Of a stretch of DNA of 64,000 bases, positions 7,199-44,179 are shown piece after piece. The position numbers and the translations under genes were made by a program. The notes under the pieces were generated by a model. That model did not search any database. It saw only the letters and a list, made by a program, of their open reading frames with translations, and was not told the DNA's origin. The first letter of the stretch is position 1; the number at the start of each line of letters is the position of its first letter. Source of the stretch: Squalus acanthias (Eukaryota); assembly GCA_030390025.1 (NCBI GenBank), contig CM059449.1:15562001-15626000 (forward strand), in the 5' to 3' direction.

Positions 7199-7199
7199 G

Positions 7200-11530: not shown

Positions 11531-11636
11531 TTACTTCACCGAAGCGTACAGCACCGCTTCTCGCTTCACAGGGCGCTCAGTTTGATTGCTGTCCTGAACA
11601 TTCAGCGTGGCGTATTGTAACTTGTCATCTCCCTCT
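11531..11636 (-). CDS. Gene A terminal exon with two ITIMs: EGDDKLQYATLNVQDSNQTERPVKREAVLYASVK*
   Basis: LQYATL and VLYASV both match (I/V/L/S)xYxx(L/V). Acceptor ctcaataaag (phase 2); stop TAA at 11531-11533. Confidence 0.85.
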
Positions 11637-14600
11637 CTTTATTGAGATGAAAGTGTTTCAGTGTTAAATAAAATATTGTAAACTGAATATAGCGTAGGGC
11701 CTCAAATCCAGCGCAACAGATGTTGTGCAGTTTCAATGGAATATAATTCAACCCAGTAAACATTCTACAGATAATTAGGATATGACTCCACCTATCAAAT
11801 ATTGTTTCGTTAAATAGGATAGATCGCGCCGTCCTAAATATTCCTGTCCTTTTGAATATATTTCAGCGAGTCAACGATTGCACGATTTAAGTAACAAGCA
11901 AGAGAAACAGTCGATCTAATTAACACTTCATTATAATGTTAAAATCCATGCATTTAGAACAATTCACACTTAATGAATTCAGGAGCAGTGGGTCAGTCAG
12001 CATCTGGGAAAGACAGACTTACATTTGGGAATAACTGTTCAGGAGCACTTTCCGTTGAAGGCAAAGTGCCAGCCCACCGGTTTCCCTGTGCTTTCTCATC
12101 CAGGAGCTCACTGACATTCTTTGCATATCCAGCATTTTCTGTTACGGCTGCAGATTTCCTCCTTATCTCGACTTTGTCAAAGTAGGTGTATTTTTACATG
12201 TGTATGCCTGGGTGTTCCGATTTTGGAGTCTATTTTAATGTTCCTGAGTGTATCTCGTGCCTTATTGATTCGTTAATGGGATGTGGACGTCGCTGGCAAG
12301 GCCAGCATTTAGCCCATCTCTAGTTGCCCTTGAGAAGGTGGTGGTGAGCCGCCTTCTTGAACCGCTGCAGTCAAGGTACTCCCACATTGTTTTTCATAGC
12401 GGCTTTTTAAAACTGAGTGGCCATTTTAGAGGACAGTTGAGAGTCAACCACATTGCTGTGGGTCTGGCGTCACATATAGGCCAGACCTGTTAAGGACGGC
12501 AGATTTCCTTCCCTAAAGGGCATTAGTGAACAAGATGGGTTTTTACGACAATCCGATAGTTTCATGTCACCATTACTGATACTAGTTTTTTAGTCCAGAT
12601 TTATTTAATTAAACTTAAATTTCCCAGTTGTTGTGGTGGGGGATGAACTGACGTCGCACGGATCATTAGTCCAGGTCTGATGCATTACTAGTCCAGTAAC
12701 ATGAGCACTATGCTACCGTTCCCTATATATGTTTGTGCATGCACCTGCTTATTTGTGTGTGGCTATATGTATTTGCGAGTGTCTGTGAGAGTGTCTCTTT
12801 CTGTGTGTGCAGGTGTTTGAATTCTGGGACTGTCAGGTTTCATTTCATGCCTTTCCTGTTTGGCTTTCTGTTGAATTATAACGAATATTCCAATCCCCGG
12901 CTCTCTTCAATTTCGATTTTCAACTTGCCGCGCCTGTGCGTAAAACTGGCGTTTGGGTTGGGCCGCACCTGTGCTTTACGCCTGTGTGACAAGTTGAGAA
13001 TCTACCCCACATCTTCAAGAAGAAAATTTGAGCCCGTCCAACCTCGTTTCATCTTTAGAATTTTACATCAACTGAGAGAACTTTTTACATGATAATCTAC
13101 CCGGAAAAGTAAACAAGAGGTTACTAGGTTTAAAAATAACAAAAATAGCCCAAGTCATTGTGCTACATACCCGATTCGTTCTTCTGCATTCAGAGCTGTC
13201 ATAATTCCTCTCTATAAAGCATAGAAAAAAGAAACAAAGAAAGTCATGCATTTATATATCGACTTTCACCACCTCAGGACGTCCCAAAGCGCTTCACAGC
13301 CGATCAAGTACTTTTTGAAATGTAGTCGCCGTTGTAATGTAGGAAACGCCGCAGCAAATTTGCACACAGCAAGCTCCCACAATCAACAATCTGACAATGG
13401 CCAAATAAACTGTTTTTAGTTATGTTGATTGAGGGACAAACATTGGTCGGGACACCGGGGAGAGCTCCCCTTCTCCTCTTCAAAATAGTGCCAAGGGATA
13501 TTTTACGTTCAGCTGAGAGAGCAGACGGAGCCTCGGTCTATTCTCTCATCTAAAAGACGGTATCTCCGACAGTGCAACGCTCCCTCAGTACTGCACTGGG
13601 AGTGTCAGCCTAGGTTTTTGTGCTCAAGTATCTGGAGTGGGAACTTAAAACACACAGCTTTCAATGTTTCAGAGGCGAGGGTGCTACCAACTGAGCCACG
13701 GGAAATGACCCTCCCTAATTTAATTTACTGGAACAGTGTATACAATACAATACAACATATTGTGCCATAGATATAGCGCTGTAATGCACTGTGGTATAAT
13801 GCTATAGGATACAACATAACATGGTAGAAAACAGGAGAACGCAATAAAATGAAGTCTACAGTAGGATGTACCGTATTGCAAAACAATAAAAGGATACAAT
13901 TAGTATGGTCCAAGATATAATACGCTACCACGCAATATAAAACAGCATAAGGTTCTTCTGTGCGATAGAAACGGTGTTCATGTCAGATTCCTAGGCCCAC
14001 TATTTTAACTGTTTACTTTAAACTAATGCAAAAAGCAATTTGACATGAGCGCGCCAAGCACTCGTACGAGAATAGCGTGATGTCCAGACTAATCGACTAT
14101 AATATATGATATATAATACAGCATGACATTGAAACGTACTTTTTAATGTCATGTAATAATTCATCACAAAAAAAATCAGCGTGTGGTAAGAAAAAATTAT
14201 AAAATATTATATTATCCATAAACCTTAACACTTCCAATTGACTTTGTGGCCAATATGTCTAACATGTGTCACTCAATAACCGTTCTGGAAACAATAATTA
14301 TTGAATCATAGAGTCATACAGCACCGAAGGAGGCCATTTGGCCCAACCTGCCTGTGCCGGCTCTCTGAAAGAGCTATTAATTAATCCCACTGCCCCCACC
14401 CCCCCCCGCACCGCTCTTTCCCCATAGCCCTGAAACAATTCCCTTTTTAACCATTTATCCAATTCCCTTTTGAAAGGTATTCTTGACTCTGCTTCCACCA
14501 CCCTTTCAGGCAGCGCATTCCAGATCACAACAACTCACTGAGTAAATAAAAATCCTCTAATTTGTCCGTCGCATTTTCCCCCCCAGTATCTTAAATCTGT

Positions 14601-17600
14601 GTCCTCTGGTTGCCGACAGAATAATCAGACAGATCAATACTGAACTCATGGTCAACGGATTATACCTGATAGATAAGAAAATTAACCAAATTATCAATTA
14701 AAATCAAATTAAATCGAAGGAGTAAGCGTTCGGAGTTTATTAAAAATGACAGGTTGCTCACGTTTCTTTCTGTCACCCACCTGTTTCATGGATCTCTGAG
14801 TAGAGCGGATCTGGACTGAAGCAAAAGAGGACATCAGAAAATTTAGGCATCCCAAACAATAAAATGCATTAAAGAAAAAGAAAGTGGTTTTCTTTAAAAA
14901 AAAGTAGATCTATGTAAACAGTTACCTGGTGGGTTGCTGAAGAGCGACTGTGAGGAGAGAAAGACAAAGACAGAAAAATTAAAGAGCTGAAGTTATTGAT
15001 TATACCTGCAAGAAGCAACGGAAATAATTGGTATCGAAATAATTGAATCACATTTTGGGGGCAACTTTAACCAAACCCGCAGAGAAACGGACGGGATAGG
15101 GTGCAACGTTTTGAAGTCAAATGAGAGCAATATTGGGCGGGTCTAAACCCGGCGTTCCACCCGATACCCTGCGTTTCCCGCCCGGTGAGTTCGGATAAAA
15201 TTATCAGAGAATTTGCCAACAACATGGAATTCAGTAGAGGTACAATTAGTGCTGTTACCTCTCTTACGATGCCGGCTGATAACAACTATGATTATGATGA
15301 TGATGATGATCACGAGAGGCACCGCTACCGCTGCATAGACGAATGGTTGGATCATTGGTGCGGACTCGCCGTGGCTGCTCTCTCCACCACCTGTGTGTAA
15401 ATCTAAAGTTTCTTTTGTGAGACAGAGCAGTCAAGAGCAGGACAATGGTCACATTGAGATTGAGGATCCGCAAATGGGACACAGATTCCCAATCCCCTTT
15501 GACATGCGGGGCTATTTCACACTGGCATACATCAAACTAGGCCACGGATCAAAACGCAAAATGTCACCAGTGGGCAACAGGGGATATTCCCACCCTGGAA
15601 GTAACACTGGGGGAATTTTAATGTAGGGACGCTTAATGGGTTGGTGCCAGTTTCCTTTCATTTAAATAGCGGGGGGTGGGGTGGGGGTCGTGTGAGTTCT
15701 GTTAACATAGGAACATGAGGAGGTCATTCAGTCCCTACAGCCTTTTCCACCATTCAATGAGATCATGGCTGATCTGCGACCTAACTACATATAACCGCCT
15801 TTTGCCCCATATCTGTTAATACATTTGGTTAACAAAACTCTATCAATCTCCGATTTAAAATAAAAAATTGATCAGTTGTCGTTTGCGGAATAGAGTTCCA
15901 AACTTTTACCACCCTTTGTGTGTGTAGAAGTGTTTCCTAATTTCACCCCTGAAAGGTTTAGCTCTAATTTTTAAACCCTGGAGATCCAATAGGTCCAGAG
16001 CAAGAACGAGAAAATCTTCCCCTCGTATTTACGGGATGCTTAAGACAAAACAAACATCTGGAAATTAGACGGGCCGAAACTGGGTGATCAACGTGGTTCT
16101 TCCGCGGACCAATCTTTGCATTTTGTTGGCGCAATGTTGTAATTTCTATTTACACACTCAACTATATCCGTCACTACCTTCATTTGCAGGATGACAGTGA
16201 AATCTAACTTATCATACATGTGTTGTCCGGTTTATTCCCAATATTGGTACGCGGTGATTTCAAGGCTCACATGTTGCTCTAATTACGGGGCTCCAGTCTT
16301 CACCTCGCACACTGTAACTGGGTTGACTTCTTATCTATAGTCCTACCTAAAATTGTATACAGCAACTGAATGTCATTAATATCCCCTCCATTTATTTATT
16401 TTAAAAGATCATTCTCGGGTTACGGGCGACGCTGGCGAGGGGGGCATGTTATTGTCCATCTCTGCTTGACCCCTTCAGAAGGTGCTGGTGGGCCGCCTTC
16501 TTCTTGAACCGCTGCAGTCCGGTGTGGTGATGGTTCTCCCGCAGTGCTGTGAGGGAGGCAGTTCCAGGATTTTGGAAGGAACAGCGATACAAGTCCAAGT
16601 CAGGCTGGTGTGTGACTTGGCGGGGGACTTGGAGGTGATTATGTTCCCATGCGCCTGCTGCCCTTGACCTTCTAGGTGGTGGAGTTCGCGGGTTTGGGAG
16701 TTCCAATTGATCTGATGGAGAATTTACCTATACGGCCAATATTACCCCCTAGTAAAATCCCACATGAATGCGTGCAATTTCATTGGTAAGAATATCTCCA
16801 CCAATCCAAACTTACTCTGTTGACGCCGTTCCACGGTCACTGTTGTCCCGTGTCCCTCTGCTGCAGCGAATCCCACGAGCTGCACCTTGCAGAAATAGAA
16901 CCCTGTATCTTCCGGTTTCAGTTGGATTATTCTAATGGACGCGTCTCTCCTCTGTCTGAAATCCTCTTCACTTGCCCCGAACACCCTGCCTCTGTATTCC
17001 GCTGTATTGTTGGAAACTTCATTTCCCTGTTTGGTGCCTCGGTGCCACGTGTAGCTGCCGATTCCTGTGGGACCCTCATATCTGCAGAGTAGGTCCGCTG
17101 TCTGGCCCGCGGTTTTGGTGAGTGATTGCGGTCTCTGAATTACGGTGATGTTTCCAACAGTAACTGCTGCAAGTGGGTAAAACAGACCATCTATAAATAT
17201 ACAGGGCACTTCTTTGCTTTAAAGCACGCCGTGGAAGGGCTGGTTTTAAACAAATATTATTTCGGAGGATTTTTGATAAGGTATTCCTGATCTTTAACTT
17301 GAGGGAATAAAAACAGAAAATACTGGAAACGCTCAGCAGGCCAGGCAGCATCTGTGGAGAGAGCAACAGAGTCAACGTTTCAGGTCGACGACTTTTCGTC
17401 AGAATTGGAAAAAGTTGGAGATGTACCAGGTTTTAAGCAAGTGTAGGGACAGGGAAAAGGGGGGAGGGGAGGAAAGAACAAAAGGGAAGTTCTGTGATAG
17501 AGTGGAAGGCAGGAGAGATTAAATAACACAAGCGATGATTGGACAAGTAAAAAGGAGATGGTAATGGGACAAGTAAAGAAACAAAAGATGGGTCTAGAAA

Positions 17601-25633: not shown

Positions 25634-25972
25634 ACAATGGGTTGATGAGTGGAATCAGAGTGTTCCAATCCCCAGATGCCATCAATGTAATAGAAGGAGG
25701 ATCGGTACAGCTGAACTGCACTTTTGAGGCGAATAGTACTGTCGGACGAGTTGTTTGGAGGCGGGCCTCACAAAACATGGAAGTGTCGGTTCGGAATCCT
25801 TTCTATCAGAGCCGGGTAACGAAGCCAGTGTCGAAATTATTTGCAGAAAAAATGGCTTTCATTGAAATGATCAATTTACTGACAATGAACGCGGATTTAT
25901 ATAACTGCGAGGTGGAAATTCCGGCGCTTGGGAAAGCAGGCGGGACAGGAACACAACTTATAATAACTGACA
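25634..25972 (+). CDS. NCR3: Gene B VJ-type IgV exon, NKp30-like
   Basis: VFQSP...EGGSVQLNCTF...VGRVVW...EVSVRNPFYQSR...LYNCEVEIPALGKAGGTGTQLIIT. Acceptor tatactctag, donor A|gtaagt, phase 1-1. The symbol is family-level. Confidence 0.9.
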
Positions 25973-27440: not shown

Positions 27441-27525
27441 GATCACCCCACCATTTTCTTGCATTATCTTTCACTTCAACCAAGCGCCACCATACTGACT
27501 ATATTATTGTTTCTGTTTCTAACAG

Positions 27526-27647
27526 GAGCTAGAGTCGAGCCTATCTGCCATTTCCCCACGCTCAGCGCTGGATTACAAGTTACAAAAACGGAGCTGCTGA
27601 TCATTCTCATAATCACAGGCCTGACGACGTACCTCTGTCCCACGTAG
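27526..27647 (+). CDS. Gene B stalk/TM exon (R)ARVEPICHFPTLSAGLQVTKTELLIILIITGLTTYLCPT*
   Basis: Acceptor gtttctgtttctaacag, phase 1, in frame with the V exon. Lys and Glu lie in or at the edge of the TM. TAG at 27645-27647 overlaps a possible donor AC|gtaggg. Confidence 0.75.
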
Positions 27648-31389: not shown

Positions 31390-31737
31390 ACAGGGTCGAT
31401 GCTGCGGGATGTTTCCCCTGGCTGCTGAGCCTAGAACAATGGTCACAGTCTCAGAATAAAGGGTCAGCCATTCAGGACTGAGATGAGTAGAAATGTCTTC
31501 ACTCAGAGAGTTGTGAATCTTTGGAATTCTTTACCCCAGAGGGCTATGGAGGCTCAGTCTTTGAGCATATTCAAGGCTGAGATCGATAGATATTTGGACT
31601 CTAAGGGAATCAAGGGTTATGGGGCTGGGGCAGGAAGGTGGAGTTGAGGTGGAAGATCAGCCATAATCATATTCAATGACGGAGCAGGCTTGAAGGGCCG
31701 AATGGCCTACTCCAGCTCCTATTTCTTATGTTCTTAT
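31390..31737 (+). mobile_element. CR1 3' fragment nested in a SINE
   Basis: GHSLRI...FTQRVVNLWNSLP motifs. The SINE head (cataac) resumes at 31735-31755. Confidence 0.75.
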
Positions 31738-31804
31738 AACCACGATGCTACCGTCCGCCCTTAGTAAATTTTAACACTTTTGCCATCACCTTTTATTCCC
31801 ACGG

Positions 31805-31980
31805 CCCTCGAACCTGCACGCTTACAACGGTCAGTGATATATTGAAGTGCAGATCACTCTTCTCTTTATCTCTCTATTTAATTGATGTGCATTTAGATAT
31901 TCAATCCACTGACATCTTTTTCCCTTTTCCGTTTTGATCTCAAAGCAATATTGCGCCTTGCAGTAACATTATTTTTAATG
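31805..31980 (+). pseudogene. Degenerate tail module 1 (25-nt exon 31805-31829 with GG acceptor; 35-nt exon 31946-31980 NIAPCSNIIFN)
   Basis: ttttattcccacgg instead of ...cacag. The 35-nt exon keeps AG/gtgagt but has TGC at the codon where paralogs have Tyr. Confidence 0.55.
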
Positions 31981-32204
31981 GTGAGTATTAGTTATATGCA
32001 TTTAACTGTTCGATTTTCTAAATAGTCCTTGAAGCAATTTTTTTTAATGAGCAATTATTGTTAGTAAAGGACTTCAGTAGTTGCGCTGATTTTTATTGCT
32101 GGATGTACAGAAGAGGTACATACAATTTTAATCTCATTTCACATTATCAAATGTCTTGTTTGCATCAAAGGATAGACCTTAATTTTCGGCTTTCATTCCC
32201 ACAG

Positions 32205-32362
32205 AGTTAGCTCCACAAGCACAAAGGTTGGTTGGTGGTTATGAGGGTGAAGCATTTTTTAAATTACCTGGATTTTTGTTTCAGCTATGTGATGTATCTT
32301 TTCTCTTCCCAGACCCTGGATGGACATCGCTGGTTCCGCCTATGATGACATTAATCCAGCTG
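32205..32362 (+). CDS. Intact tail module 2: exons 32205-32226 (ELAPQAQ) and 32313-32362 (RPWMDIAGSAYDDINPA)
   Basis: Acceptors ttcattcccacag and tttctcttcccag; donors AG|gttggt and TG|gtgagt; phases 1-2-1. SAYDDI is ITIM-like. Confidence 0.7.
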
Positions 32363-33104
32363 GTGAGTGACGCACCTGCAGAGCAGTTAACCTGCTCCTC
32401 AATGGACCGGTTGCTTCAGAGCCTACCTGCACTGCCCGGTGTACTCCTGAGTCACCAGTGCCAGAGAGATCCCATGGTTAGATCCGTGAGATGTGCCGAA
32501 CTAACTGATCTTACTCTGGCTGGTGATTGGGTGCTACGGTGGCCGGGATTTTAATCGGGAGTCTGGTTGGGTGCAGAGCGGAAAGACTGGCTGGGAGCTG
32601 TGAGGTGGGAGGTATCAGGTGCGGGCCGGAGGTGAGGTTGGGTTGTCGGGGGCCGGAGGAGGATTGGGCAGGAGGGAGGGAAGCATCGGGGCCGGAGCGT
32701 CGAGGAGGTGAGGGAGAGAAGATCGGGGCAGGAGCATTGGGTGGGGGGTGGTGTGGACAGGGAAAGAATATCGGAGCCGGAGCATCAGGGGAGAAGGGAG
32801 AGAACATTGGGGTTGGAGCCTGGGGGCAAGGGGGGATCGGGAGAAAACATCTGGGGGTGGGGGTGGGGGGAGAGGTGGGATCTGCTTGCACCATCTTTTC
32901 AGGTCGTGCTTTCCCTATCATAACAACTCACTGCATAAAAAATTCTCCTGAACTCCCCTCTGGTACTTTTGCCAATTATCTTGAATCGGTATCCTCTGGT
33001 TACCGACCCTCCCACCAGTGGAAACAGTTTCTTGTAGTCGAACTGTTTTTAAAAAGATTGCATTAACGTTACAAAGCTTTCATGGTGAACTTTTACTTTT
33101 GTAA

Positions 33105-33263
33105 ATGTTCCTCCACCACTTGGAAGGTCGGTAAATCTCAGAGTTAACGTTTCCTACATCTTTTATGCTAATTGCTCTGTAACTCTGCAGTAACACTCAT
33201 TTTCTCTTATTTGTATGTCGTCCCGAAGGAATGAGCCGTTCTGTGATTAAACTAACTTGGATG
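33105..33263 (+). pseudogene. Dead tail module 3 (22-nt DVPPPLG exon with AA acceptor; 35-nt exon 33229-33263 NEPFCD*TNLD)
   Basis: Same sizes and phases as the intact modules. Acceptor ttttgtaa, Tyr position TGT, in-frame TAA. Confidence 0.55.
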
Positions 33264-33379
33264 GTGGGCACCACCGATTAAAGAATCATTTAACAAGATT
33301 CAATAAGGCTTCAGTATTATACTTGTGTGAATAGCTCAGGATCAAACTCAGTAGCTTGGTGTTTGCTATTTTTTTAAAT

Positions 33380-34125
33380 ATTCGTTCTTTGGATGTGGGC
33401 ATCACTGGCAAGGGCAGCATTTATTGCCCATCCCTAATTGCCCTTGAGAAGGTGGTGATGAGCCGCCTTCTTGAACCGCTGCAGTCCGTGTGCTGAAGGT
33501 ACTCCCACAGTGCTGTTAGGGAGGGAATTCCAGGATTTTGAGACAGCGACGATGAAGGAACAGTGACATACTTCGAAATTAGGATGGTGTGTAACTTGGA
33601 GGGTAACTTGGAGGTGATGGTGCTCCCATACGCCTGCTGCCCTTGTCCTTCTATGTGTTACAGTTCGCGGGTTTGGGAGGTACTGCCGAAGAAGCCTTGG
33701 CGAGTTGCTGCAGTGCATCTTGTCGATGGTACACACTGCAGCCACGTTACACTGGTGGTGGAGGGAGTGAGTGTTTAAGGTGGTGGACGCAATGCCAATC
33801 AAGTGGGTTGCTTTGTCCTGGATGGTGTCGAGCTTCTTGAGTATTGTTGGAGCTGCACTCATCCAGCCAAGTGGAGAGTATTCCATCACACTCCTGACTT
33901 GTGCCTGGTAGATGGTGGAAAGGCTTTGGGGAGTCAGGAGGTGCGACACTCGCCGCAGAATACACTACATCTGGCCTGCGCTTGTAGCCACATTATTTAT
34001 GTGACTGGTCCTGTTAAGTTTCTGGTCAATGGTGACACCCCCAAGATGTTGATGGTGGGGGATTCAGCGATGGTAATGCCGTTCAATGTCAAGGGGCGGT
34101 GGTTAGACTCTCGCTTGTTGGAGAT
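33380..34125 (-). mobile_element. LINE RT C-terminal fragment
   Basis: ORF 33434-33949 IYQAQVRSVMEYSPLGW...WNSLPNS. Confidence 0.9.
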
Positions 34126-34157
34126 GTAATATTCTTCACCTTGTGCTGTTGGACACG

Positions 34158-34342
34158 GGGCAATTTTAACCTAACCCGACCATCGGGAAACTGACGAGAT
34201 CGGGTGGAACGCCGGCATTACATGCCGCTCGATTTTACTCTCCAGTGAAGTCAGTGGAGGGTAATATGGGGCAGGGGGTGTAAAACCGGAGTTCCACCCG
34301 ATCCCGTGGGTTTTTCTGGCCGGCCTTAGGCTAAAATTACAC
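34158..34342. repeat. MITE-like palindromic element
   Basis: gatcgggtggaac/gttccacccgatc inverted repeat; centre ctccagtgaagtcagtggag; aattttaacctaa/ttaggctaaaatt ends. Confidence 0.65.
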
Positions 34343-34840
34343 ACGGTATCAGCAGCGAGCACTGCTGGAGCGCTATTGAATTACAGCACCGGTTCGGAGG
34401 AGCGTAGAGTCCCCCCTGCACCGTACTAACGCTATACTTTAGCCACAATCTCTGAAGAATACCTCTCATTGGATCAGTATGACATCGCTTTTGATTGGTT
34501 GGGCAGCTACACACCATCCCTTTAATGCTTCATTATATTCAGTTCAACCACGCCCGCTGGATGCTGGATTACCTAAACTATCTTTACACATTGCCCCTCT
34601 AGACAGGGATAAAGGGCACCCTCACCCGGCAGTTAGAGTTGGAATGAAACTGGTCGCATAATGAAATGGGAACCGACTGCAGTGAAACCTTCCCACTCCC
34701 ACTCCCCTCAGATAAACAATTATTAATTAATATTGAAAAATGATAAAAACCAAGACGCAGTTAAGAATGGAGCTGTGCTAAACGCAGTCTCAGATATAAC
34801 AGAGTTACGAATTTCTTTTTTGTTCATTGTCTTTCCACAG

Positions 34841-34974
34841 ACTTCTCTCCACCTTTGCAATGGTGCGTAGATATCACTGTGACATTTTGCTGCCTTTATT
34901 TTCATGGCACGTACCGCGTGTCCTCCCTTTGTGGTTCAGTGATGAAGAGGTGTATGCCGAAATCCCCCCGCTTG
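34841..34974 (+). CDS. Intact tail module 4: exons 34841-34862 (DFSPPLQ) and 34940-34974 (CDEEVYAEIPPL)
   Basis: Acceptors tgtctttccacag and ccctttgtggttcag; donors TG|gtgcgt and TG|gtaagg; 22 + 35 nt, phases 1-2-1; acidic YxxI. Confidence 0.75.
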
Positions 34975-36129
34975 GTAAGGATTGTTACAGTGTCTTACTT
35001 ACAAGCTACTATTGTCTATATTAGCCTTTCATTTATGCGACATTCATTACTTCGATAGAGATAGAGGAACAGATATGTCGGCAAATCTCAGAGAAGTGTA
35101 GAAATAATAGGATAATAATTGTAGGGGATTTCAACTTCCCCAATATTAACTGGGATAGTCCGAGTGTGAAAGGATTAGAGTGTGTGGAATTCTTAAAATG
35201 CATCCAGGAGAGCTTTTTGAGCCAGCATGTAGAAAGTCCTACAAGAGAGGGGCGGTACTGGACCTAATTCTAGGGAATGTAGCCGGACAAGTGATAGAAG
35301 TGTCAGCAGGAGAGCATTTTGGTGACAGTGACCATAATTCGGTGAGATTTAAGGTAGTCATGGAAAAGGGCAAAGATGGACCGGAAATTAAATTTCTAAA
35401 TTCGGGGAAGGCCGATTTTAATATGATAATGCTGGATCTGGCCAAAGTGGACTGGGATCAGCTACTTGTAGGAAAATCCACATCAGAGCAGTGGGAGTCT
35501 TTCAGAAAGGAAATAGAGAGAGAACAGCGCCAACATGTTCCCGTGAAGGTCAATGGTGGGACCAACAAGCCCAGGGAACCCTGGATGTCAAGGGATATAC
35601 AAGAATGAATTAGGAAAAAAGGGAGGGTTTGGCAGATACAAAGGACTAAAAATAGTGGAAGCCCTAGAGGGGTATAGAAAGTGCAGGGGGTACTTGAAAA
35701 AGAAATTAGGAGAGCGAAGAGGGAGCATGAAAAAACACTGGCGGGCAAAATAAAGGAAAGTCCCAAGGTGTTTTATAAGTTTATTAAGGGCAAGAGGATA
35801 ACCAGGGAAAGAGTAGGGCCCATTAGGGACCAAAGTGGCAATCTGTGTGTAGAGCCGGAAGATGTAGGTGAGGTTTTAAATGAATATTTTTCATCTGTGT
35901 AAACTATGGAGAAGGACGCTGTAGGCATAAAAATCAGGCAGGGGGATTGTGATATACTTGTCCAAATTAGTATTGAGTGGGAGGAGGTACTAGCGGTTTT
36001 AGCGGGCTTAAAAATGGTTAAATTCCCAGGCCCAGACGAGATGTATCCCAGGCTGCTGTGTGTGACAAGGGAGGAGATTGCAGGGGCTCTGACACAAATT
36101 TTCAGAACTTCTCTGGCCACAGGGGAGGT

Positions 36130-36359
36130 CATGATGCGGAGATGCCGGTGTTGGACTGGGGTGGACAAAATTGAGAGGTCGCACAACACCAGGTTATAGT
36201 CCAACAGTTTTATTTGAAATCACAAGCTTTCGGAGCTATCGATTGCTCCTTCCTCAGGTGAAGTGAGGAAGGAGCAATCGATAGCTCCGAAAGCTTGTGA
36301 TTTCAAATAAAACTGTTGGACTATAACCTGGTGTTGTGCGACCTCTCAATTTTGTCCAC
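36130..36359 (-). mobile_element. Young Penelope-type pLTR insertion forming a perfect hairpin, with 13-bp TSD
   Basis: Arms 36161-36256 and 36264-36359 with a 7-nt loop; CCACAGGGGAGGT at 36117-36129 and 36356-36368. Confidence 0.85.
36220..36261 (-). ncRNA. Minimal type I hammerhead ribozyme
   Basis: TCAC-CTGAGGA-A-GGAGC(aatcgata)GCTCC-GAA-AGCT-T-GTGA: intact core, stems I and II, palindromic stem/loop III. Confidence 0.8.
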
Positions 36360-37964
36360 AGGGGAGGTGCCAGAGGAATGGAGGGCAGCCAACGTAGTAC
36401 CATTATTCAAGAAGGGTAGTAGGGATAAACCAGGAAATTACAGGCCAGTGAGCCTAACATCAGTGGTAGAGAAATTATTGGAAAAAAATCTGGGGGACAG
36501 AATTAGTCTCCACTTGGAGAGGCAAGGATTAATCAAGGATAGTCACCATGGCTTTGACATGGGGAGATCATGTATAACCAATTTGATTGAATTTTTCGAG
36601 GGGTTGACTAGCTGTGTGGATGAGGGTAGTGCAGTTGATGTAGTCTACATGGACTTCAGTAAGGCTTTTGACAAAGTCCCGTGTGGGAGTCTGGTCAAGA
36701 AGGGAAGAGCCCATGGGATCCAGGGCAATTTGGCACATTGGATCCTAAATTGGCTCAGTGGCAGGCGGCAGAGTCTGGTTCTCGAATATGGTTTTTGTGA
36801 CTGGAAGCCTGTGCCCAGTGGTATACTGCAGGGATCGGTGCTGGATCCTTTGCTGTTTGTAGTGTACATTCATGATTTAGATATGAATGTAGGAGGTATG
36901 ATCAGTAAGTTCGCAGATGACACGAAAATTGGTGGAGTGGTAAATAGCGAGGAGGGAAGCCTCAGGGTACAGGACGATATAGACGGGTTGGTCAGATGGG
37001 CAGAACAGTGGCAAATGGAATTTAACCCTGAAAAGTGTGAGGAGATGCATTTTGGGAGTACTAACAAGACAAGGGAATACACAATGAATGGTAGGACGCT
37101 AGGAAGATCAGAGGATCAGAGGGAGCTTGGTGTGCATGTACATATATCCCTGACGGCAGCAGGACACGTAGATAAGGTGGTTAAAAAGGCATATGGGATA
37201 CTTGCCTTCATTAGCCCAGGCATAGAATATAAGAGCAGGGAGGTTATGATGGAGCTGTACAAAACGCTTGTTAGGCCACAGCTGGAATACTGTGTGCAGT
37301 TCTGGTCGCCACACTATAGGAAGGATGTGATTGCATTGGAGAGGGTGCAGAGGAGATTCACCAGGATGTTACTGGGCTGGAGCGCTCAGCTATGTAGAGA
37401 GACTGGACAGGCTGGAGTTGTTTTCCTTAGAGCAGAGAAGGCTGAGGGGGAATGTGATTGAGGTGTACAAAATTATGAGGGGCATAGATAGGGTAGATAG
37501 AAAGGAACTGTTCCCTTAGTAGAGGGGTCAATAACCAGGGGGCATTGTTTCAAGGTAAGGGGCAGGAGGTTTAGAGGGAATTTGAGGAAAAACTTTTTCA
37601 CCCAGAGGGTGGTTGGAATCTGGAACTCACTGCCTGAAAGGGTGGTAGAGGCAGGAACTCTCACAACATTCAAGAAGCCTTTAGATGAGCACTTGAAACG
37701 CCATAGCATACAAGGCGACGGACCAAGTGCTGGAAAATGGGATTAGAATAGACAGGGCTTGATGGCCGGCGCGGACACGATGGGCCGAAGGGCCTCTTTC
37801 TGTGCTGTAAAACTCTATGACTCTTGACTCCGGCTCGCATTAAACGGCGATAAGGGCCACTCCCCTTAATATAAATAACAATAACCCTATGGCTATAATT
37901 AACGTGAAAAAACTCGCACATATTAGAGTGTACTTCTAATATTGTACCGACTGTGTTATGAGAA

Positions 37965-38660
37965 TCATTGAAAGTTAACATGCAGGTAAAGCAAGCAATT
38001 AGGAAAGCAAATGGTACGTTGGCCATTATTACAAGAGGATTTGAGTAAAAGAGTAAAGACGTCTTACTGCAATTATATTGGGCGCTGGTGAGACCACACC
38101 TGTAGTATTGTGGACAGTATCTGTCTCCTTACCAAAGGAAGGATATACTTGCCATAGAGGGAGTGCAACCAAGGTTCACCAGGCTGGTTCCTGGGATGGG
38201 GGAATTGTCCAATGAAGAGAGATTGAGTAGACTAGGCCTATATTCTCTAGAGTTTAGAAGAATGAGAGTTGATCTCATTGAAACATACAAAGTTCTTGCA
38301 GGGCTTGATAGGGTAGATGCAGGGACGATGTTTCCCCTGGCTGGGGAGTGTAGAACCAGGGGTCACAGTCTCAGAACAAGGGGTCGGCCATTTAGGGCTG
38401 AGATGAGGAGACATTTCTTCACTCTGAGGGTGTGGAATCTTTGGAATTCTCTACCCCAGAGGGCTGTGGAGGCTCAGTCGTTGAGTATATTCAACACAGA
38501 GATCGATAGATTTTTGAATATTAAGGGATCAAGGGATATGGGGATAGTGCAGGAAAGTGGAGATGAGGTAGAAGATCAGCCATGATCTGATTGAATGGCG
38601 GAGCAGGATCGAAGGGCCAAATGGCCGACTCCTGCTCCTATTTCTTTTCTTCTTATGTTA
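37965..38660 (+). mobile_element. CR1 LINE 3' fragment
   Basis: ORF 38163-38585. Confidence 0.9.
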
Positions 38661-39989
38661 TTATGTCTCCTTCCGTATGAAAAAATAAGGTACTTTTCCT
38701 GTTCGCTATAGTAACGGTCGGATTTGCTGTGTAACCAGACCACATGCTTGTGGCTATAAACATTATGCACAGTGAATGTTTTCATACTGACATTAAATTT
38801 AGTGCGATTATTTTGCTCTTCGTCCCGAGCCATACTTTCGATTTCCTGCAAAGTTGCTTCCTAGAACCGTCCTTTAAACATGTAACAACAGTCAAATGTT
38901 CAGATCCAAATGTTTTCTTAGTTGTCAGATATTATAGAGATGGTTTGCTCCGTAGATTTTAACGGTGTGCTATGTAATATTACAGTTACTGAAATTCAGA
39001 CATAGAATGTATTTATTGTTTCTGTAAAAAAAACCCATGTCAGGTAAAAACGAAAAGTTCCTCAGAGCGAAAAATGCCACTTTTGAACTCACTATAAAAG
39101 CTTATACATTTTTGGAAAAAGGGAAATCCATTAGGCAAACCGAGCCACTGTCCCCTATTGTGAGACAAATCCAACCTAACAACAACTACTTGCATTGATA
39201 TAGCGCCTTTTATATAGTAAAACGTCCCACAGGCTTCACAGGAGCGATTATCCATCAAAATTTGACACAGAGCCACATATTAAGACAGAGGTAGGCTTTA
39301 AGGAGCGTCTTAAAGGAGAATAGCGAGGTAGACAGGCTTAGGGAGGGAATTACAGAACTGAGGACCCAGCCAGCTGAAAGCCTTCTCATCCAATCGCTTA
39401 ATCCACTATCTCTCTGGAAGCGCATTTAACAGTGGTCTTGCAGTACGGCAGTCTCACCTAAGCAAAACAGTTCGCGGTACCCTTGGATGTGACAGCAGCA
39501 GTGGAGCTTGGGGACCAAGCTGTCAGTCAGACTACAATTGTACTGAGGCAACCAGGTGTGAGACCACCTCGAGCAAAGGGACGAGCATAGCCAATCCGCT
39601 TCATAATCTCGCAAACATGTGCGCCATTCTCTTGAAATTTCCTCTCCTCCTAAGAAAAACATGGCCAAACTCAATAACTTTCCTTGATAACATATTATTC
39701 AGTTTGTTCCTGAACTGTTTCCCTTTTCCTGAAGACGCTTCTTATTTGCATACTGCTCAATGAGTGATGGCCGTCCTCCAGTAACTCGGCCAAGTGGCCA
39801 TTGTGCATATGTGAACATCGACCGTGAATTTAACAAGCCGATCCTGTAATCAGCAGAGTCCCACACTAATGCCATTTCTATTACATGGTCGATGAAGATC
39901 CAATGAGTACACGGAATCTAGCTAAAGCTCCATCCCTAACCCAGTGGCGTTGAACCACCTCTCCCCAACACTTGCCGAACTCTACTACT

Positions 39990-40345
39990 CTCCTTTTGCC
40001 TTGCACCATCTCTTAATGTCTCGTAATGTCTCTTAAGCTTCCTGCCTTCCATCAAGAGCCATCTTTTGTTTCTTAACTTGTCCCATCACCATCTCTTTTG
40101 CCTTGCACCATCTCTTAATCTCTCTTAATCTCTTTTGTCTTCCATCCTATTACAGGCCTTCCCTTTTGTTCTTTCCTCCCCTCCCCCCTTTCCCTGCCCC
40201 TGCACTTATTTAAAAACCTGTTCTATCTTCAGCTTTTTCCAGTTCTGACGATGGGTCATCGACCTGCAACGTTAACTCTGTTTCTCTCTCCACAAATGCT
40301 GCCTGACATGCTGAGTATTTCCAGCAGTTTTCTGTTTTTATTTCA
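39990..40345 (+). mobile_element. Penelope-derived pLTR repeat with mutated hammerhead (40241-40277)
   Basis: AGTT-CTGACGA-T-GGGTC atc GACCT-GCAACGTT-AACT (GAAA changed to GCAA). Confidence 0.75.
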
Positions 40346-40444
40346 ACTAAAGTGTTGCTTGCTTGTTCTGTGCAGCTCCTCTACTCAATGGACTCACGCC
40401 TTTGAGGCATGGGGGAGCGTTTATCCTTAAAAAAGGAAATCACC

Positions 40445-42790
40445 GAATCATAGAATGACACAGCACAGAAGGCCATTCGACCCATTGTACCTGTGCCGGC
40501 TCTTTGATAGAGCTATCCAATTAGTCCCACTGCCCCGCTCTTTCCCCATAGTCCTGTATTTTTCCCCTTCAAGTGTTTATCCAATTCTCTTTTGAAGGTT
40601 ACTGCATTTCAGACAGTGCATTCCAGAGCACAACAACTCGCGGTGAATAAAGAGTTTCCTCATGTCACCTCTGGTTCTTTTGCCAATCAACTAAACTCTG
40701 TGTCCTCTGGTTACCGACCCTTCTGCCACTGGAAACAATGTATCCTTATTTACTCTATCAAAACCCTTCATGATCTTAAACACCTCGATCAAATCTCCTC
40801 TTTAAATTCTCTGCTCTGCGAAGAACACGCCCAGCTTCTCCAGTCTGTCCACATAACTGAAGTCACTCAATGGTACCATTCTAGTAAATCTCTTAGTCCT
40901 TCTCATCATCAAGCTATCACTCTATCACTGCATCACTTGAAAGTTCCTCCACATTCTCTAGTCGGACTCTATATCTTCTGTAACATCTCTAGTCTGACAT
41001 CTCTCTCTCTAAAGTCTCATAAGCCAGCTGAACACCTCTCTCAGGTCTTGACATCCTTCTTAAAGTGTGGTGCCCAGAATTGAACACACTCTAGCTGAGC
41101 CATAACCAGTGTTTTATAAAGGTTCAGCATAACTTCCTTGCTTTTGTAATCTTTGCCTCTATTAATAAAGCCAACGATTCTATAAGACTTGTTAACACCC
41201 TTCTCAACTTGTTCCGCCATCTTCAAAGATTTATGTACATACAACTGCAGGTCTTTCTGTTCCTGCACTCCCTTTAAAATGTTATCATTTTGTTTATATT
41301 GCCTCTCCTCATCCTTCCTACCAAAATGTATCCCTTCACGCTTCTCTGCGTTAAATTTCATCTGCCATGTGTCCGCCCATTTCACCAGTCTGTCTATGTC
41401 CTCCTGAAGTTTCCTGCTCATTCTTTACTTCATTTCCGATTTTTTTTTCATCTGCAACCTTTGAAATGATGCCCTGTATACCCAAGTTGAGGGCATGAAT
41501 ATATATCAAAAGCAGGGTTCCCAATACTGACCGCTGGGGAGCACCACTGTACACTTCACTCCAGTCTGAAAAACCACCGTTCACGACGACTCTCTGCTTG
41601 CTGTCCCTTAACCAATTTCATTGCCACTGTCCCTTTAATCCCATGGTCTTTAATTTTGCTAACAAGTCTATTATGTGAGACTTTGTCAAACGACTTTTGA
41701 AAGTCGATATATAAAACATCAACCACACTACCCTCATCAACCCTTTCCATTACTTCATCAAAGAATTCAATCCAGTTAGCAAATCACGATTTTTCTTCAA
41801 CAATACCGTGCTGACTTTCATTTATGAGCCCACACTTTTCCAAATGCCAGTAAATTTTGTCACGGATAATTGTCTCTCAAAGTTTCACCACAACCCACAT
41901 TCGGCTGACTGGCCTGTAGTTGCCGGGTGTATTCTTCTACCATTTTTTAAACAAGTGTGTAACATCTGCAATCCTCTAGTCCTCTGGCACTACCCCCATT
42001 TCTAAGGAGGATTGGAAGATTGTGGCCAAAGCCTGTGTAATTTCCGCCCATACGTTCCTCTGCAACCTAAGATGCATCCCATCCGGACCGGGTAAGCTTT
42101 CTACTTTGAGGACTGCCTAACTCCTCTTAAAATATTTGTATCCTAAATATATCGCCACTACCTCCTCCTTTACTGCTACATTGGCAGCATCCTCTTCTCT
42201 AGTGAAGACAGATAAAAAGTATTCATTTAGTACCTCAGCCATGCCTCTGTCGGAGCAAGAATTACATAGGATTACATCGGCACAGAAACAGGGCTTTCGG
42301 CCCAAGCAGTCCATACCGGTGTTTATGATCCACTCGAGCCTCCTCCTGTCTTTCCTCATCTAAATCTGTCAGAATAACCCTCTATTCCCTCTCCCTCATG
42401 TTTGTCCAGCCTCCCCTTAAATGCATCTATACTATTTGCTTCAACCACTCCCTGTGGTAGCGAGCTCCACATTCTCACCAGTCTTTGGGTAAAGAAACTT
42501 CTTCTAAATTCCCTATTGGATTTCTTGGTGCCTTTCGTATATTGATGGCGAAAATTGCCTTTTTGGTCCCTAATCTGTCCGATCCTTCCTTTGACTACCC
42601 TTTTACTATTTATATGTTTATAAAAGACTTTTGGCTTCCCTTTATGTTGCCGCTCATCTATTCTCATACTCTCTCTTTGCCCCTCTTATTCCCTTTTATA
42701 GATCTCCTCTGTACTTCCTGTGTCCATCCTGCTTCTCGACTGTATTATGAACCTTACGTTTGTCATAAGCCTCCTTTTTCTGTCTCAACT
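40445..42790 (-). mobile_element. Degenerate CR1 LINE with a nested CR1 3' end (~42260-42530)
   Basis: YIDFQKSFDKVSH, SGAPQRSVLG and KWADTWQMKFN motifs in successive ORFs. Confidence 0.9.
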
Positions 42791-43031
42791 CTGAACTCGG
42801 TCACCTTGGGGGGGGGGGGGGGCGGTGAAATTGATCATTGGCGAAGCCGCAAAACAGGTGGAATCGCATATACTACTGATAATGAATTCCATTGAAGTCA
42901 ATGGCGTTGAATATCGGGCGCAGCGTATAACAGGGGACCCATGCAAAACCGCCTGTTTTCCGTCCCTGCCCATGTCAAATTTCAACCCCACCCTCCATAT
43001 TTCTTGTTTGCCCCTGTTAACTTTCTCAAAG

Positions 43032-43181
43032 GCAAGAATATTTGTCCTGTGATTGGGTGACCAGAAAAGATCACGTGCTGCTCCGGATGGATTCTGATTT
43101 CTGAATTAATAGTTGGCTTTATGCTTTCCTTTGCTTTAATAAAGAGAAAATGTAAACCTTACCTATATTTCTAAGTTATAA
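43032..43181 (+). CDS. Candidate final tail module: 25-nt exon 43032-43056 (GKNICPVI) and terminal exon 43145-43181 (GENVNLTYISKL*)
   Basis: Acceptors aactttctcaaag and ctttgctttaataaag (cf. gene A terminal acceptor ctcaataaag|AGAG); phases 1-2; 88-nt intron. Confidence 0.5.
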
Positions 43182-44179
43182 GCCTAGAAATTGTACGTCG
43201 TTATTGAAGTAACAACACTTAAAACCATTCGGTACTAAATCTCTCTAAGAGAGATTTTTAATCCATTTATGCTAAAGGTCCTGTGCCTTCCTCAAGTAAC
43301 AGGCAATGAAATTTGATGGAAGTGCTTTAAGCGTTTTAATGATAACATAACATCTGGGGGACATTATATGTAACAAAGGAGCAAACCGATTCTGTATAAA
43401 TAAGATATTAATTTCATTCAGCATAGTGCATAGGAGAAACGGTCCCTTATATTAAATTTCAAGCTCTTGTGTAATCATGTCTAATGTTTGGTCAGAATTT
43501 TGCCAGCTGTGTTTTATTCAGTTTTAATAGATTCGTTGATCTTCGAATTTTTCACAAATTTTCCTTCATTTCGTTCTGTGGTGAAGTTTGTAATATGTTT
43601 TATTACTTTAACATAAACATAATGAAAACATGTTTAAACCATATGCAACAGTGAAGAAGAAAACAACATAAAATATGGGATCTGCATTTGGAAGGGACTG
43701 CAATGAGGAATTCGGTATAAACAGCTCCACAAGTGTAAAGTGTAAAGATTGTGCTTTTTCACATGACTCCTGCAAACTATCTAATCCATCAAATCTGTTT
43801 CGGGGTGATTGCAAAGATGTCTCTGGCAATGTTGGTCAAGCATAAAATCTGTAAATAACAGTTTGTTAAAAGTTTCAATGATGATTCCATTAATTGATAA
43901 AACATAATCTGATTAATCTGCTTGCTCGAAAAATGGTATCTTGATCACAGATTGCACACCGTGTCTTACTATCACAGATAGCATCCCAGTAATCGTAAGA
44001 TATTATTGATTTAGGCTCTATTTTATCTTTTGAATATGCCAAAGAAATCAGTAATAGATCAGAAACAGCACTGATCTCCCACAGAAATATAGACCGACTG
44101 GTAAAATGGGCAGTCTGATTTTTGGATGCCCTCAGCAGGAAAATCAAGCAACGCTGTTGTGGGCAAGTTATTATAATCA

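What the first reader, a model, noticed from the sequence alone, without database searches (positions are those of the whole stretch)
31805..43181. Modular tyrosine-motif cassette: tandem 22/25-nt + 35-nt micro-exon pairs undergoing birth and death
Seen: repeated symmetric (phase 1-2-1) exon pairs with short internal introns (77-116 nt) at 31805/31946, 32205/32313 (50-nt variant), 33105/33229, 34841/34940 and 43032/43145, plus 14947/14815 in gene A. In the 35-nt exons Tyr is at full codon 5 and Ile at codon 8 (LYSEI, VYAEI). The two modules whose first acceptor is broken (cgg, taa) are exactly those whose Tyr codon has become Cys (TGC, TGT), and one also has a stop. None of this is visible in the ORF track. 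Inference: receptor signalling tails are assembled from a duplicable, skippable ~19-aa YxxI cassette, allowing tunable numbers of phosphotyrosine sites. I know of no description of this for NCR3-family genes. A further eroded module may lie near 38830-38964.
Basis: partly seen in the sequence, partly recalled or inferred. Interest (0 to 1): 0.85.

Follow-up and report, generated by a model that had tools for sequence, protein, structure and literature searches.

The report
Micro-exon tyrosine tail of shark NKp30-like receptor
Four pairs of tiny exons behind a shark NKp30-like receptor gene are real, old coding units for short tyrosine-bearing tail segments, matching an annotated horn shark gene, but this copy is partly broken and nothing shows the units are switched in and out.

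Summary

**Chance.** The bare geometry (AG-22/25-GT, short intron, AG-35-GT) is at chance frequency: 264 hits in the window against about 230 expected.

**Homology.**
- M1-M4 (31805-34974) are real. They match units 2-5 of the five-unit tail of a horn shark RefSeq NCR3-like gene, one by one and in order.
- M4 and the gene A pair have the best splice signals of all 264 hits.
- M5 (43032/43145) and 38830-38964 have no support.
- A last-exon homologue lies at 43615-43671, but its expected acceptor reads AC.

**Live or dead.**
- M3 is dead, as claimed.
- M1's Cys is not a decayed Tyr of this copy. The horn shark gene has the same Cys in all 9 isoforms.
- No horn shark isoform skips a unit.
- No RNA was available for this species.
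- The units show almost no DNA similarity to each other (only M3-M4 first exons, z 3.3), so they are ancient, not recent duplicates.

**Verdict.** This is a new variant of a known kind and moderately interesting. First-reader notes report the same cassette elsewhere in this genome (unchecked).

The parts
25634..25972 (+). V-set Ig exon of gene B (339 nt, phase 1 to 1)
   Evidence: Pfam V-set E 8.3e-06. 65% identity to horn shark NCR3-like P0014. Acceptor and GTAAGT donor read.
27526..27643 (+). Status unresolved.
   Evidence: Ends in phase 2, which fits the 35-nt exon at 31946. Its acceptor and first 55 nt lie in a stretch repeated at 7199-7598 (91.5%), next to a SINE-like repeat. The hydrophobic core is short. 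Similarity to horn shark and catshark TM exons is not significant: 143 and 30 of 500 shuffles reach it.
31805..31829 (+). M1 first exon (25 nt), counterpart of horn shark unit 2 first exon. Acceptor reads GG, so it is probably unusable.
   Evidence: Peptide LEPARLQ against the horn shark unit 2 first exon scores 19, the best of five units. It keeps a pyrimidine tract score of 15 and a donor score of 7, against backgrounds of 8.7 and 4.3.
31946..31980 (+). M1 second exon (35 nt), intact, Cys at codon 5. Counterpart of horn shark unit 2 second exon.
   Evidence: 9 of 11 residues identical to P0026/P0160. tblastn E 0.002-0.004. AG acceptor, GTGAGT donor.
32205..32226 (+). M2 first exon (22 nt), intact
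   Evidence: best match is horn shark unit 3, score 20. Splice scores 15 and 7.
32313..32362 (+). M2 second exon (50 nt), intact, AYDDI with Ser at -2
   Evidence: tblastn match to horn shark unit 3, 7 of 9 residues over the motif. Splice scores 17 and 8.
33105..33126 (+). M3 first exon (22 nt), acceptor reads AA. Relic of horn shark unit 4 first exon.
   Evidence: VPPPLG against VPPPLE, 5 of 6 identical..
33229..33263 (+). M3 second exon (35 nt), dead: Cys where the horn shark has Tyr, and an in-frame stop at codon 7
   Evidence: score 15 against about 60 for self. 4 of 11 residues identical to horn shark unit 4.
34841..34862 (+). M4 first exon (22 nt), intact
   Evidence: best match is horn shark unit 5, score 24. 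The pair ranks 2 of 264.
34940..34974 (+). M4 second exon (35 nt), intact, VYAEI
   Evidence: 7 of 11 residues identical to horn shark unit 5, which has His in place of Tyr.
43615..43671 (+). Homologue of the horn shark isoform X4 last exon (YATV, then stop). The expected phase-1 acceptor at 43611-43612 reads AC, and an in-frame TAA lies at 43609-43611.
   Evidence: tblastn E 0.001, 11 of 18 residues identical. Sequence read.
43032..43181 (+).
   Evidence: No counterpart in any horn shark unit. Best database scores are at unrelated positions. AAG acceptors.
14926..14947 (-). Gene A first micro-exon (22 nt)
   Evidence: The pair ranks 1 of 264 for splice signals.
14781..14815 (-). Gene A second micro-exon (35 nt), LYSEI
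   Evidence: Matches nurse shark NCR3 P0006 and horn shark P0008 at the same place in their tails.
11534..11638 (-). Gene A last exon with QYATL and LYASV. Starts in phase 2.
   Evidence: tblastn E 3e-10 to horn shark P0155 and 2e-07 to P0009. Read.
15272..15394 (-). Gene A transmembrane exon (region of the tblastn match)
   Evidence: Hydropathy scan. tblastn E 3e-08 to nurse shark NCR3 P0006.

Best explanation
The stretch 31.8-35.0 kb holds four consecutive two-micro-exon coding units. Each has a 22- or 25-nt exon, an intron of 77-116 nt, and a 35- or 50-nt exon, in phase 1-2-1. They belong to the cytoplasmic tail of a shark NKp30/NCR3-like immunoglobulin receptor.

**What each unit encodes.** About 19-24 residues: a proline-rich piece from the first exon, and a piece with the core Y-x-[D/E]-I-[P/N] from the second.

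**Origin.** The four units are the positional counterparts of units 2-5 of a five-unit tail in a horn shark (Heterodontus francisci) RefSeq gene. The array therefore arose by old tandem duplication and has been inherited as a block.

**State of this copy.** It is eroding:
- unit M3 is dead (no acceptor, a stop codon, Tyr codon changed);
- the first exon of M1 has lost its acceptor;
- the last-exon homologue at 43.6 kb has lost its acceptor;
- unit 1, the exon before the last, and a recognisable transmembrane exon were not found.

M1's second exon, M2 and M4 remain intact.

**Shown.** Coordinates, phases, splice signals, colinear homology, the lesions, and constitutive use of all five units in the nine horn shark isoform models.

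**Inferred.**
- The tyrosines are phosphorylated and act as SH2 docking sites. The acidic Y-x-[D/E]-I core fits the recalled preference of Src-family SH2 domains better than the inhibitory motif. Only M2, with Ser at -2, fits the ITIM pattern.
- The number of working sites differs between gene copies through loss of units and Tyr replacement (Cys, His, Asn at that place in relatives), rather than through regulated skipping.
- If this copy is still expressed, the in-frame path is V exon, the exon ending in phase 2 at 27643, then 31946, M2 and M4.
For: **Structure**
- coordinates, lengths, phases and splice dinucleotides.
- splice-signal score. Gene A's pair and M4 rank 1 and 2 of 264 geometric hits. 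All eight M1-M4 exons have pyrimidine-tract scores of 11-17 against a background of 8.7 +/- 3.1, and donor scores of 6-8 against 4.3 +/- 1.3.
- M1-M4 lie in non-repeated DNA between transposon copies.

**Homology**
- profile search of 1.84 billion representatives (760 hits at E <= 0.001, best 150 listed).
- among those 150, P0026 is the top scorer for M1's second exon (49) and for M4's two exons (24 and 40).
- P0026 and 8 sister sequences are isoforms of one horn shark gene named NCR3-like or SIRP beta-2-like.
- tblastn hits are colinear on the plus strand.
- the score matrix is diagonal (first exon, second exon): M1 with unit 2, M2 with unit 3, M3 with unit 4 (29, 15), M4 with unit 5.
- colinear chain of 104.7 bits, against shuffles of mean 56.3, sd 8.8, max 84.3; 0 of 200 reach it.
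- the 3-nt isoform differences in the horn shark fall exactly where the window's exon junctions predict (at the split codon between the two exons of unit 1, and at the start of unit 2).

**Lesions at the last exon**
- last-exon homologue and its broken acceptor.
Against: - There is no transcript evidence for this species. Only three small runs of uncertain kind were listed, and none holds the V exon. Their contigs cover only the transposon parts of 31700-35100. Depth on the exons is zero, apart from 5.11 in one run in bin 32156-32269.
- The horn shark proteins are XP_ computational models, and I could not inspect the evidence behind them.
Its exon lengths are therefore inferred, not read.
- Gene B's V domain is of a different subtype (65% to P0014) from the V domain of the horn shark gene that carries this tail (36%). 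The tail may not belong to gene B at all.
- The thresholds of the chain test were set after a permissive version failed and after I had seen the five matches.
- Individual tblastn E-values are weak, apart from M1's second exon and the last exon.
Confidence: 0.75

Rival explanations
1. One reading: a live, dynamic system. Units are currently being duplicated and lost, and are individually skipped by alternative splicing to set the number of phosphotyrosine sites per receptor molecule.
For: - Every unit is symmetric (phase 1 to 1), so skipping keeps the frame.
- Related horn shark genes do show cassette-type isoform differences.
  - P0158 and P0061 differ by a 14-aa in-frame insert.
  - P0154 carries an extra piece with a YDVI motif that P0155 lacks, followed by a frameshifted end (sequences). 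The window's gene A last exon reads N-T-P-R-stop in the alternate frame, the same as the end of P0154.
- Three tandem 19-aa units in P0061 are 12 of 19 identical, which suggests a younger duplication.
Against: - 0 of 9 isoforms of the gene that matches M1-M4 lack a unit. They differ only by TM-exon skipping, 3-nt shifts and alternative ends.
- Units in the window are almost undetectably alike at DNA level. Of 15 pairs per part, only M3-M4 first exons reach z 3.3.
- No RNA was available for this species.
Confidence: 0.2
2. The whole tail (31.8-43.7 kb) is an orphan pseudogene relic of a horn-shark-type gene whose V and TM exons are gone. It merely lies downstream of an unrelated V exon (gene B). 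M2 and M4 are intact only because too little time has passed.
For: - Three of 17 examined splice sites are broken (M1 first acceptor, M3 first acceptor, last-exon acceptor), and M3 has an in-frame stop.
- Horn shark unit 1, the exon before the last and the TM exon were not found.
- SINE and LINE copies fill most of 26.7-31.7 kb.
- The V subtype does not match the tail type.
- The tail and TM of the horn shark gene with the B-type V (P0014/P0153) are absent from the window.
Against: - Intact exons keep 64-82% residue identity to the horn shark, similar to the V domains (65-72%), while dead M3's second exon has 36%.
- The exon at 27526-27643 ends in phase 2, which is what the 35-nt exon at 31946 needs after loss of M1's first exon.
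- The V exon is open and has good splice sites.
Confidence: 0.35
3. Chance: the pairs are AG/GT coincidences in transposon-rich intron, picked out by eye.
For: - The geometry is at chance frequency (264 against 230).
- A transposon ORF gives a perfect Tyr5/Leu8 hit at 23643/23495.
- The relaxed 'dead' geometry gives 3386 hits.
- This reading probably holds for M5 and for 38830-38964.
Against: For M1-M4 and gene A: colinear homology to annotated proteins and top-ranked splice signals.
Confidence: 0.03

Closest known systems
Horn shark (Heterodontus francisci) RefSeq gene with isoforms XP_067865360-369, named NCR3-like or SIRP beta-2-like
   Same: The tail units appear in the same order. The window's M1-M4 match its units 2-5, and its isoform X4 last exon matches 43615-43671.
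   Different: - It has five units, a clear TM exon and an A-like V domain.
- Tyr is present in units 1, 3 and 4 and replaced by His in unit 5. Here Tyr is in M2 and M4, and unit 4 (M3) is dead.
- It is a computational model, and I found no paper describing its tail.
PECAM-1 (CD31) cytoplasmic exon 14
   Same: A 19-aa tail exon carrying a functional tyrosine that is included or skipped (abstract start of PMC2132561). 19 aa equals 22 + 35 nt.
   Different: It is one exon, not a split pair, and it is not tandemly repeated. Skipping is documented there and not here.
Chicken BG genes (MHC-linked V-domain, butyrophilin-like)
   Same: The tail is built from many repeated micro-exons, and their number differs between gene copies: 13 to 36 exons of 21 or 24 nt (passages of PMC4046983).
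   Different: Those are single 21-nt heptad exons forming a coiled coil, not tyrosine motifs. The phase and unit structure differ.
Human NCR3 (NKp30) and NCR2 (NKp44) splice variants
   Same: It is the same receptor family name. Splice variation within NCR3 exon 4 gives three cytoplasmic domains with different signalling. One NKp44 isoform carries an ITIM (passages of PMC5371597).
   Different: Human NKp30 has a short tail from one exon and signals through a TM arginine and adaptor chains. It has no micro-exon array.
CEACAM1 long and short tails
   Same: Inclusion of a short exon that is not a multiple of three changes the frame, and with it the tyrosine motifs of the tail. This resembles horn shark P0154 against P0155.
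   Different: It is a different family. The parallel concerns gene A's relatives, not M1-M4.

Membership tests
Shark NCR3/NKp30-like receptor family | Single-exon V-set Ig domain most similar to proteins named NCR3 | tested here: met
   - Pfam V-set for both V exons.
- Gene A's V is 73% identical to nurse shark NCR3 P0006.
- Gene B's V is 65% identical to horn shark NCR3-like P0014.
Shark NCR3/NKp30-like receptor family | A transmembrane exon following the V exon | tested here: inconclusive
   Gene A: met. Gene B: the candidate at 27526-27643 has a short hydrophobic core, is partly in repeated DNA, and shows no significant similarity to relatives' TM exons.
Shark NCR3/NKp30-like receptor family | MHC linkage and B7H6-type ligand (recalled from Flajnik 2012 and Kinlein 2021, neither read here) | not testable with these tools
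   The window holds no MHC gene that I identified. The papers were not held.
ITIM (recalled pattern [S/I/V/L]-x-Y-x-x-[I/V/L]) | Small or hydrophobic residue at -2 and I/V/L at +3 | tested here: not met
   Of three intact Tyr exons, only M2 (Ser at -2) fits. M4 has Glu at -2 and gene A's exon has Pro at -2. As a class the units are therefore not ITIMs.
ITAM (recalled pattern YxxI/L, 6-12 residues, YxxI/L) | Spacing of two motifs | tested here: not met
   Counting residues of M2 and M4 gives 15 residues between the first Ile and the next Tyr if M2 is followed directly by M4. Horn shark Tyr positions are 185, 232 and 251.
Alternatively spliced tyrosine cassette (PECAM-1 exon 14 type) | Isoforms with and without the unit | tested here: not met
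   0 of 9 horn shark isoforms of the matching gene lack a unit. It could not be tested for this species.
Tandem micro-exon tail (chicken BG type) | Repeated exons of one fixed small size encoding a periodic peptide | tested here: inconclusive
   A repeated two-exon unit of 57-72 nt is present. The sizes, phases and peptide type differ from the 21-nt heptad exons.

The most novel reading that the evidence does not exclude
A two-micro-exon unit of about 19 aa (22 + 35 nt, phase 1-2-1) is the common building block of cytoplasmic tails across the shark NCR3-like multigene family.

- Units are duplicated. A horn shark paralogue has three tandem copies.
- Units are silenced, as M3 is here.
- Units gain or lose the tyrosine. 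Relatives carry Tyr, Cys, His or Asn at that place.
- In some genes, units or neighbouring cassettes are alternatively included.

This would give an old NK-type receptor family a combinatorial way to set signalling. Gene predictors mostly miss it: the catshark model stops after the TM exon.
Probability: 0.35. Interest if true: 0.6.

Novelty: new variant of a known kind. Interest (0 to 1): 0.42.

Why it matters
Whether a shark NKp30-like receptor activates or inhibits is read from its tail. Here the tail sits in exons of 22-50 nt that no ORF scan shows and that annotation often drops.

- Among the database hits, only the horn shark models carry this tail.
- The catshark model of the orthologous V and TM stops after the membrane segment.

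Knowing the unit structure (sizes, phases, core motif) gives a practical search key. It can complete these genes in other cartilaginous fish and sort the family into signalling types.

It also gives a clean case of unit-by-unit decay inside a receptor tail. It does not overturn any view of immunoreceptor evolution, because multi-exon tyrosine tails and micro-exon tails are already known from PECAM-1, chicken BG and others.

Tried and rejected
**RNA evidence**
- One run search with the gene B V exon listed 3 runs of the same species label. None holds the stretch.
- Laying them on 31700-35100 covered only transposon parts. No conclusion about expression is possible.

**Fetching the horn shark locus**
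Exon lengths there are inferred from the protein and from the places of the 3-nt isoform differences.

**Papers**
- Kinlein 2021 and Flajnik 2012 were not held. What I say of them is recalled.
- My claim that the unit is undescribed rests only on searches. None returned a paper on shark NCR3 tails.
- I did not ask for supplements. The BG paper's supplementary figures on exon groups were not seen.

**Unit-to-unit DNA similarity**
- Essentially none, so I rejected recent duplication.

**First colinear-chain test**
- It was too permissive. The best 'real' chain was noise on the minus strand: 134.3 bits against a shuffle mean of 120.5 and max of 151.4. It was uninformative.
- I replaced it with a stricter test (matches of at least 16 bits, span of at most 4 kb).
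- I chose those limits after seeing and the five matches, so the 0 of 200 is somewhat flattering.

**Missing horn shark pieces**
- tblastn searches for unit 1, the TM exon and the exon before the last found nothing above noise.
- The same holds for the TM and tail of the B-type horn shark gene P0014/P0153.

**Other rejected points**
- TM exon of gene B: similarity to relatives is not significant. Left unresolved.
- 38830-38964: no module-like reading in any frame.
- M5: weak likeness to the C-terminus of P0014 and P0029 (score 24 of a possible 54) is matched by equally high scores at unrelated places. Rejected.

**Joined model**
The micro-exon peptides were compared exon by exon.
- Database searches used the V exon ORFs or proteins that the tools had returned.

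Full report
**What is in the window.** Two V-set immunoglobulin exons face away from each other.
- Gene A is on the minus strand (V at about 17155-16816).
- Gene B is on the plus strand (V at 25634-25972).
- Both pass Pfam V-set.
- Gene A's V is 73% identical to a nurse shark protein named NCR3. Gene B's V is 65% identical to a horn shark NCR3-like protein.
- Much of the rest is transposon sequence: reverse-transcriptase ORFs at 27.9-30.6 and 35.2-37.5 kb, and several copies of a SINE-like repeat.
- The window has no N.

**Check of the observation.** The geometry alone means nothing.
- AG-22/25-GT, an intron of 60-130 nt, then AG-35-GT occurs 264 times on the two strands. Simulated sequence gives 230 +/- 22.
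- 105 of the 264 are open in the required frame (90 expected).
- Three have Tyr at codon 5 and I/L/V at codon 8, against 0.65 expected. 13 of 100 simulations gave two or more. One of the three sits in a transposon ORF at 23643/23495.
- Two independent tests rescue M1-M4 and gene A's pair. The first is a crude splice-signal score: pyrimidines upstream of each acceptor plus matches to the donor consensus, with the consensus recalled. Gene A's pair and M4 rank first and second of the 264.
- All eight M1-M4 exons, including the two with broken acceptors, score well above background. The second test is homology.

**Homology.** A profile of the two V exons was searched against 1.84 billion representative proteins. 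This gave 760 hits at E <= 0.001, of which the best 150 were listed. I compared each micro-exon peptide, one exon at a time, with those 150.
- One protein, P0026, came top for M1's second exon (score 49, 9 of 11 residues identical). It also came top for M4's first exon (24) and second exon (40).
- P0026 also held matches for M2.
- P0026 is XP_067865368 of Heterodontus francisci. With eight sister sequences it forms the isoform set of one gene, named NCR3-like or SIRP beta-2-like.

The longest isoform (P0160, 320 aa) reads as follows:
- a V domain;
- a 43-aa transmembrane segment;
- five successive units of 18-26 residues, each a short proline- or glutamine-rich piece followed by a piece with the cores YDDI, a Cys-containing piece, YDEI, YHDI and HSDI;
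- a short acidic piece;
- alternative ends.

tblastn of this tail on the window gives plus-strand hits in the same order as the protein. They lie at 31923-31985, 32335-32361, 33104-33130, 34840-34860 and 34926-34970.

| Window unit | Best horn shark unit | Score, first exon | Score, second exon |
|---|---|---|---|
| M1 | unit 2 | 19 | 49 |
| M2 | unit 3 | 20 | 40 |
| M3 | unit 4 | 29 | 15 |
| M4 | unit 5 | 24 | 43 |

- M5 and gene A's pair have no counterpart in this gene.
- A first, permissive chaining test was swamped by noise.
- A stricter test gave exactly these five hits as the best chain: 104.7 bits, against shuffled tails of mean 56.3, sd 8.8 and max 84.3. 0 of 200 reached it. I set its limits after seeing the data.
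- The small isoform differences in the horn shark fall where the window's junctions predict. One residue is present or absent at the split codon between the two exons of unit 1, and one near the start of unit 2.

- M3 is a dead unit, as claimed. Its first exon still reads 5 of 6 residues like the horn shark's. Its second exon has Cys where the horn shark has Tyr, a stop at codon 7, and only 4 of 11 identities. Its first acceptor reads AA.
- M1 is different. Its second exon is the best conserved piece of the whole tail, and the Cys is there in all nine horn shark isoforms. The Cys is therefore not a sign of decay in this copy. Only the acceptor of M1's first exon (GG) is a lesion.
- The units are old. 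Within the window they are almost undetectably alike at DNA level. Of 15 pairs per part, only M3-M4 first exons reach z 3.3. Each is closer to its horn shark counterpart than to its neighbours.
- 'Skippable' is not supported for this gene. The nine isoforms differ by TM-exon skipping (three isoforms), 3-nt shifts and three alternative ends. None lacks a unit.

Relatives do show cassette behaviour.
- P0158 and P0061 differ by a 14-aa in-frame insert.
- P0154 carries an extra piece with a YDVI core that P0155 lacks, and then a different C-terminus.
- The window's gene A last exon, read one base out of frame, ends N-T-P-R-stop exactly as P0154 does. That isoform is therefore a frameshifted tail.
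- P0061 has three tandem 19-aa units without tyrosine, 12 of 19 identical between the first two. Unit duplication has thus happened more than once in the family.

**The end of the gene.**
- The last exon of horn shark isoform X4 matches 43615-43671 (11 of 18 identical, E 0.001, core YATV against YSTV).
- In the window, the two bases where a phase-1 acceptor should be read AC, and an in-frame TAA lies just upstream.
- Horn shark unit 1, the acidic piece and the TM exon were not found.
That would splice in frame to the 35-nt exon at 31946, bypassing M1's dead first exon.
- However, its acceptor and first 55 nt lie in a stretch present twice in the window, next to a SINE-like repeat. Its hydrophobic core is short. 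Its likeness to the horn shark and catshark TM exons is not significant.

The copy carries at least three broken acceptors, one stop and several missing parts. Whether it is still a working gene is open. I put that at about 0.4.

**RNA.** None holds the V exon. Their contigs lie only on transposon parts of 31700-35100. The exon bins have zero depth, except 5.11 in one run at 32156-32269, and I could not see that contig. This says nothing about expression either way.

**Likely working.** Shown: the exon structure, the conserved core Y-x-[D/E]-I-[P/N], and the proline-rich partner piece.

Inferred:
- The tyrosines are phosphorylated and serve as SH2 docking sites.
- By the recalled motif rules, only M2 (Ser at -2) fits an ITIM. 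One horn shark unit (Thr at -2) fits an ITSM.
- The spacing is too wide for an ITAM.
- The acidic residues after Tyr, with Ile at +3, fit the recalled preference of Src-family SH2 domains.
- Gene A differs. Its last exon carries two motifs (QYATL, LYASV) conserved in horn shark and bamboo shark relatives. That is an inhibitory-looking pair.

**Known relatives of the idea.**
- PECAM-1 has a 19-aa tyrosine exon that is skipped or kept (abstract start only).
- Chicken BG genes have tails of 13-36 micro-exons of 21 nt (passages).
- Human NCR3 and NCR2 change tails by splicing (passages).
- I found no paper on the shark NCR3 tail structure. The two most relevant papers were not held, so I cannot say it is not in print.
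- Among database proteins, only the horn shark models carry this tail (2 of 20 candidates; 5 of 695, the others matching through V or TM only). The catshark model stops after the TM segment.
- First-reader notes of this scan report the same 22+35 cassette and longer micro-exon tails in neighbouring windows of this genome. I did not test them.

**Verdict.** This is a real, conserved, two-micro-exon tail unit in a shark NKp30-like receptor cluster, seen here in a partly decayed copy. It is a new variant of a known kind.

Noticed in passing
window 27181-27580 and 7199-7598: A 401-nt stretch is present twice at 91.5% identity. Its first part (27081-27443) belongs to a SINE-like repeat with at least five more copies (45427-45789, 40345-40050, 17306-17611, 2312-2603, 1728-2000). 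It is either transposon-derived or a trace of a further gene copy near 7.5 kb.
   Followed up: partly
window 25058-24996 and 41064-41123: The last 21 or so residues of horn shark isoform X1 match antisense LINE ORFs in this window (E 0.02 and 0.26). That horn shark end therefore looks like a transposon-derived alternative last exon.
   Followed up: no
window 11534-11638 minus strand: Gene A's last exon starts in phase 2 behind an AAG acceptor, whereas the 35-nt exon at 14815-14781 ends in phase 1. At least one more exon of the 22-nt type should lie between 14780 and 11640. I did not find it.
   Followed up: partly
window 23643/23495 minus strand: A perfect 25+35-nt 'module' with Tyr at codon 5 and Leu at codon 8 lies inside a transposon ORF. 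The same peptide recurs at 33434-33949. It is a ready-made false positive for this pattern.
   Followed up: yes
proteins P0061 and P0158 (horn shark): The tail has three tandem 19-aa units without tyrosine, with core T-[N/D]-I-P. The two isoforms differ by a 14-aa in-frame insert that holds a Cys where gene A-type tails have Tyr.
   Followed up: partly
protein P0002 (Scyliorhinus canicula LOC119975537): The model fuses an A-type gene with the V and TM of the catshark counterpart of the horn shark gene. It stops shortly after the TM segment, so the micro-exon tail seems unannotated there.
   Followed up: no
window 32156-32269: One of the three laid runs (X3) has a mean depth of 5.11 in this bin, which holds M2's first exon. 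All other exon bins are zero. The contig itself was not listed.
   Followed up: no
window 47993-48616 minus strand: An ORF of 207 aa looks like a retroviral or retrotransposon integrase C-terminal part, judged from the translation only.
   Followed up: no
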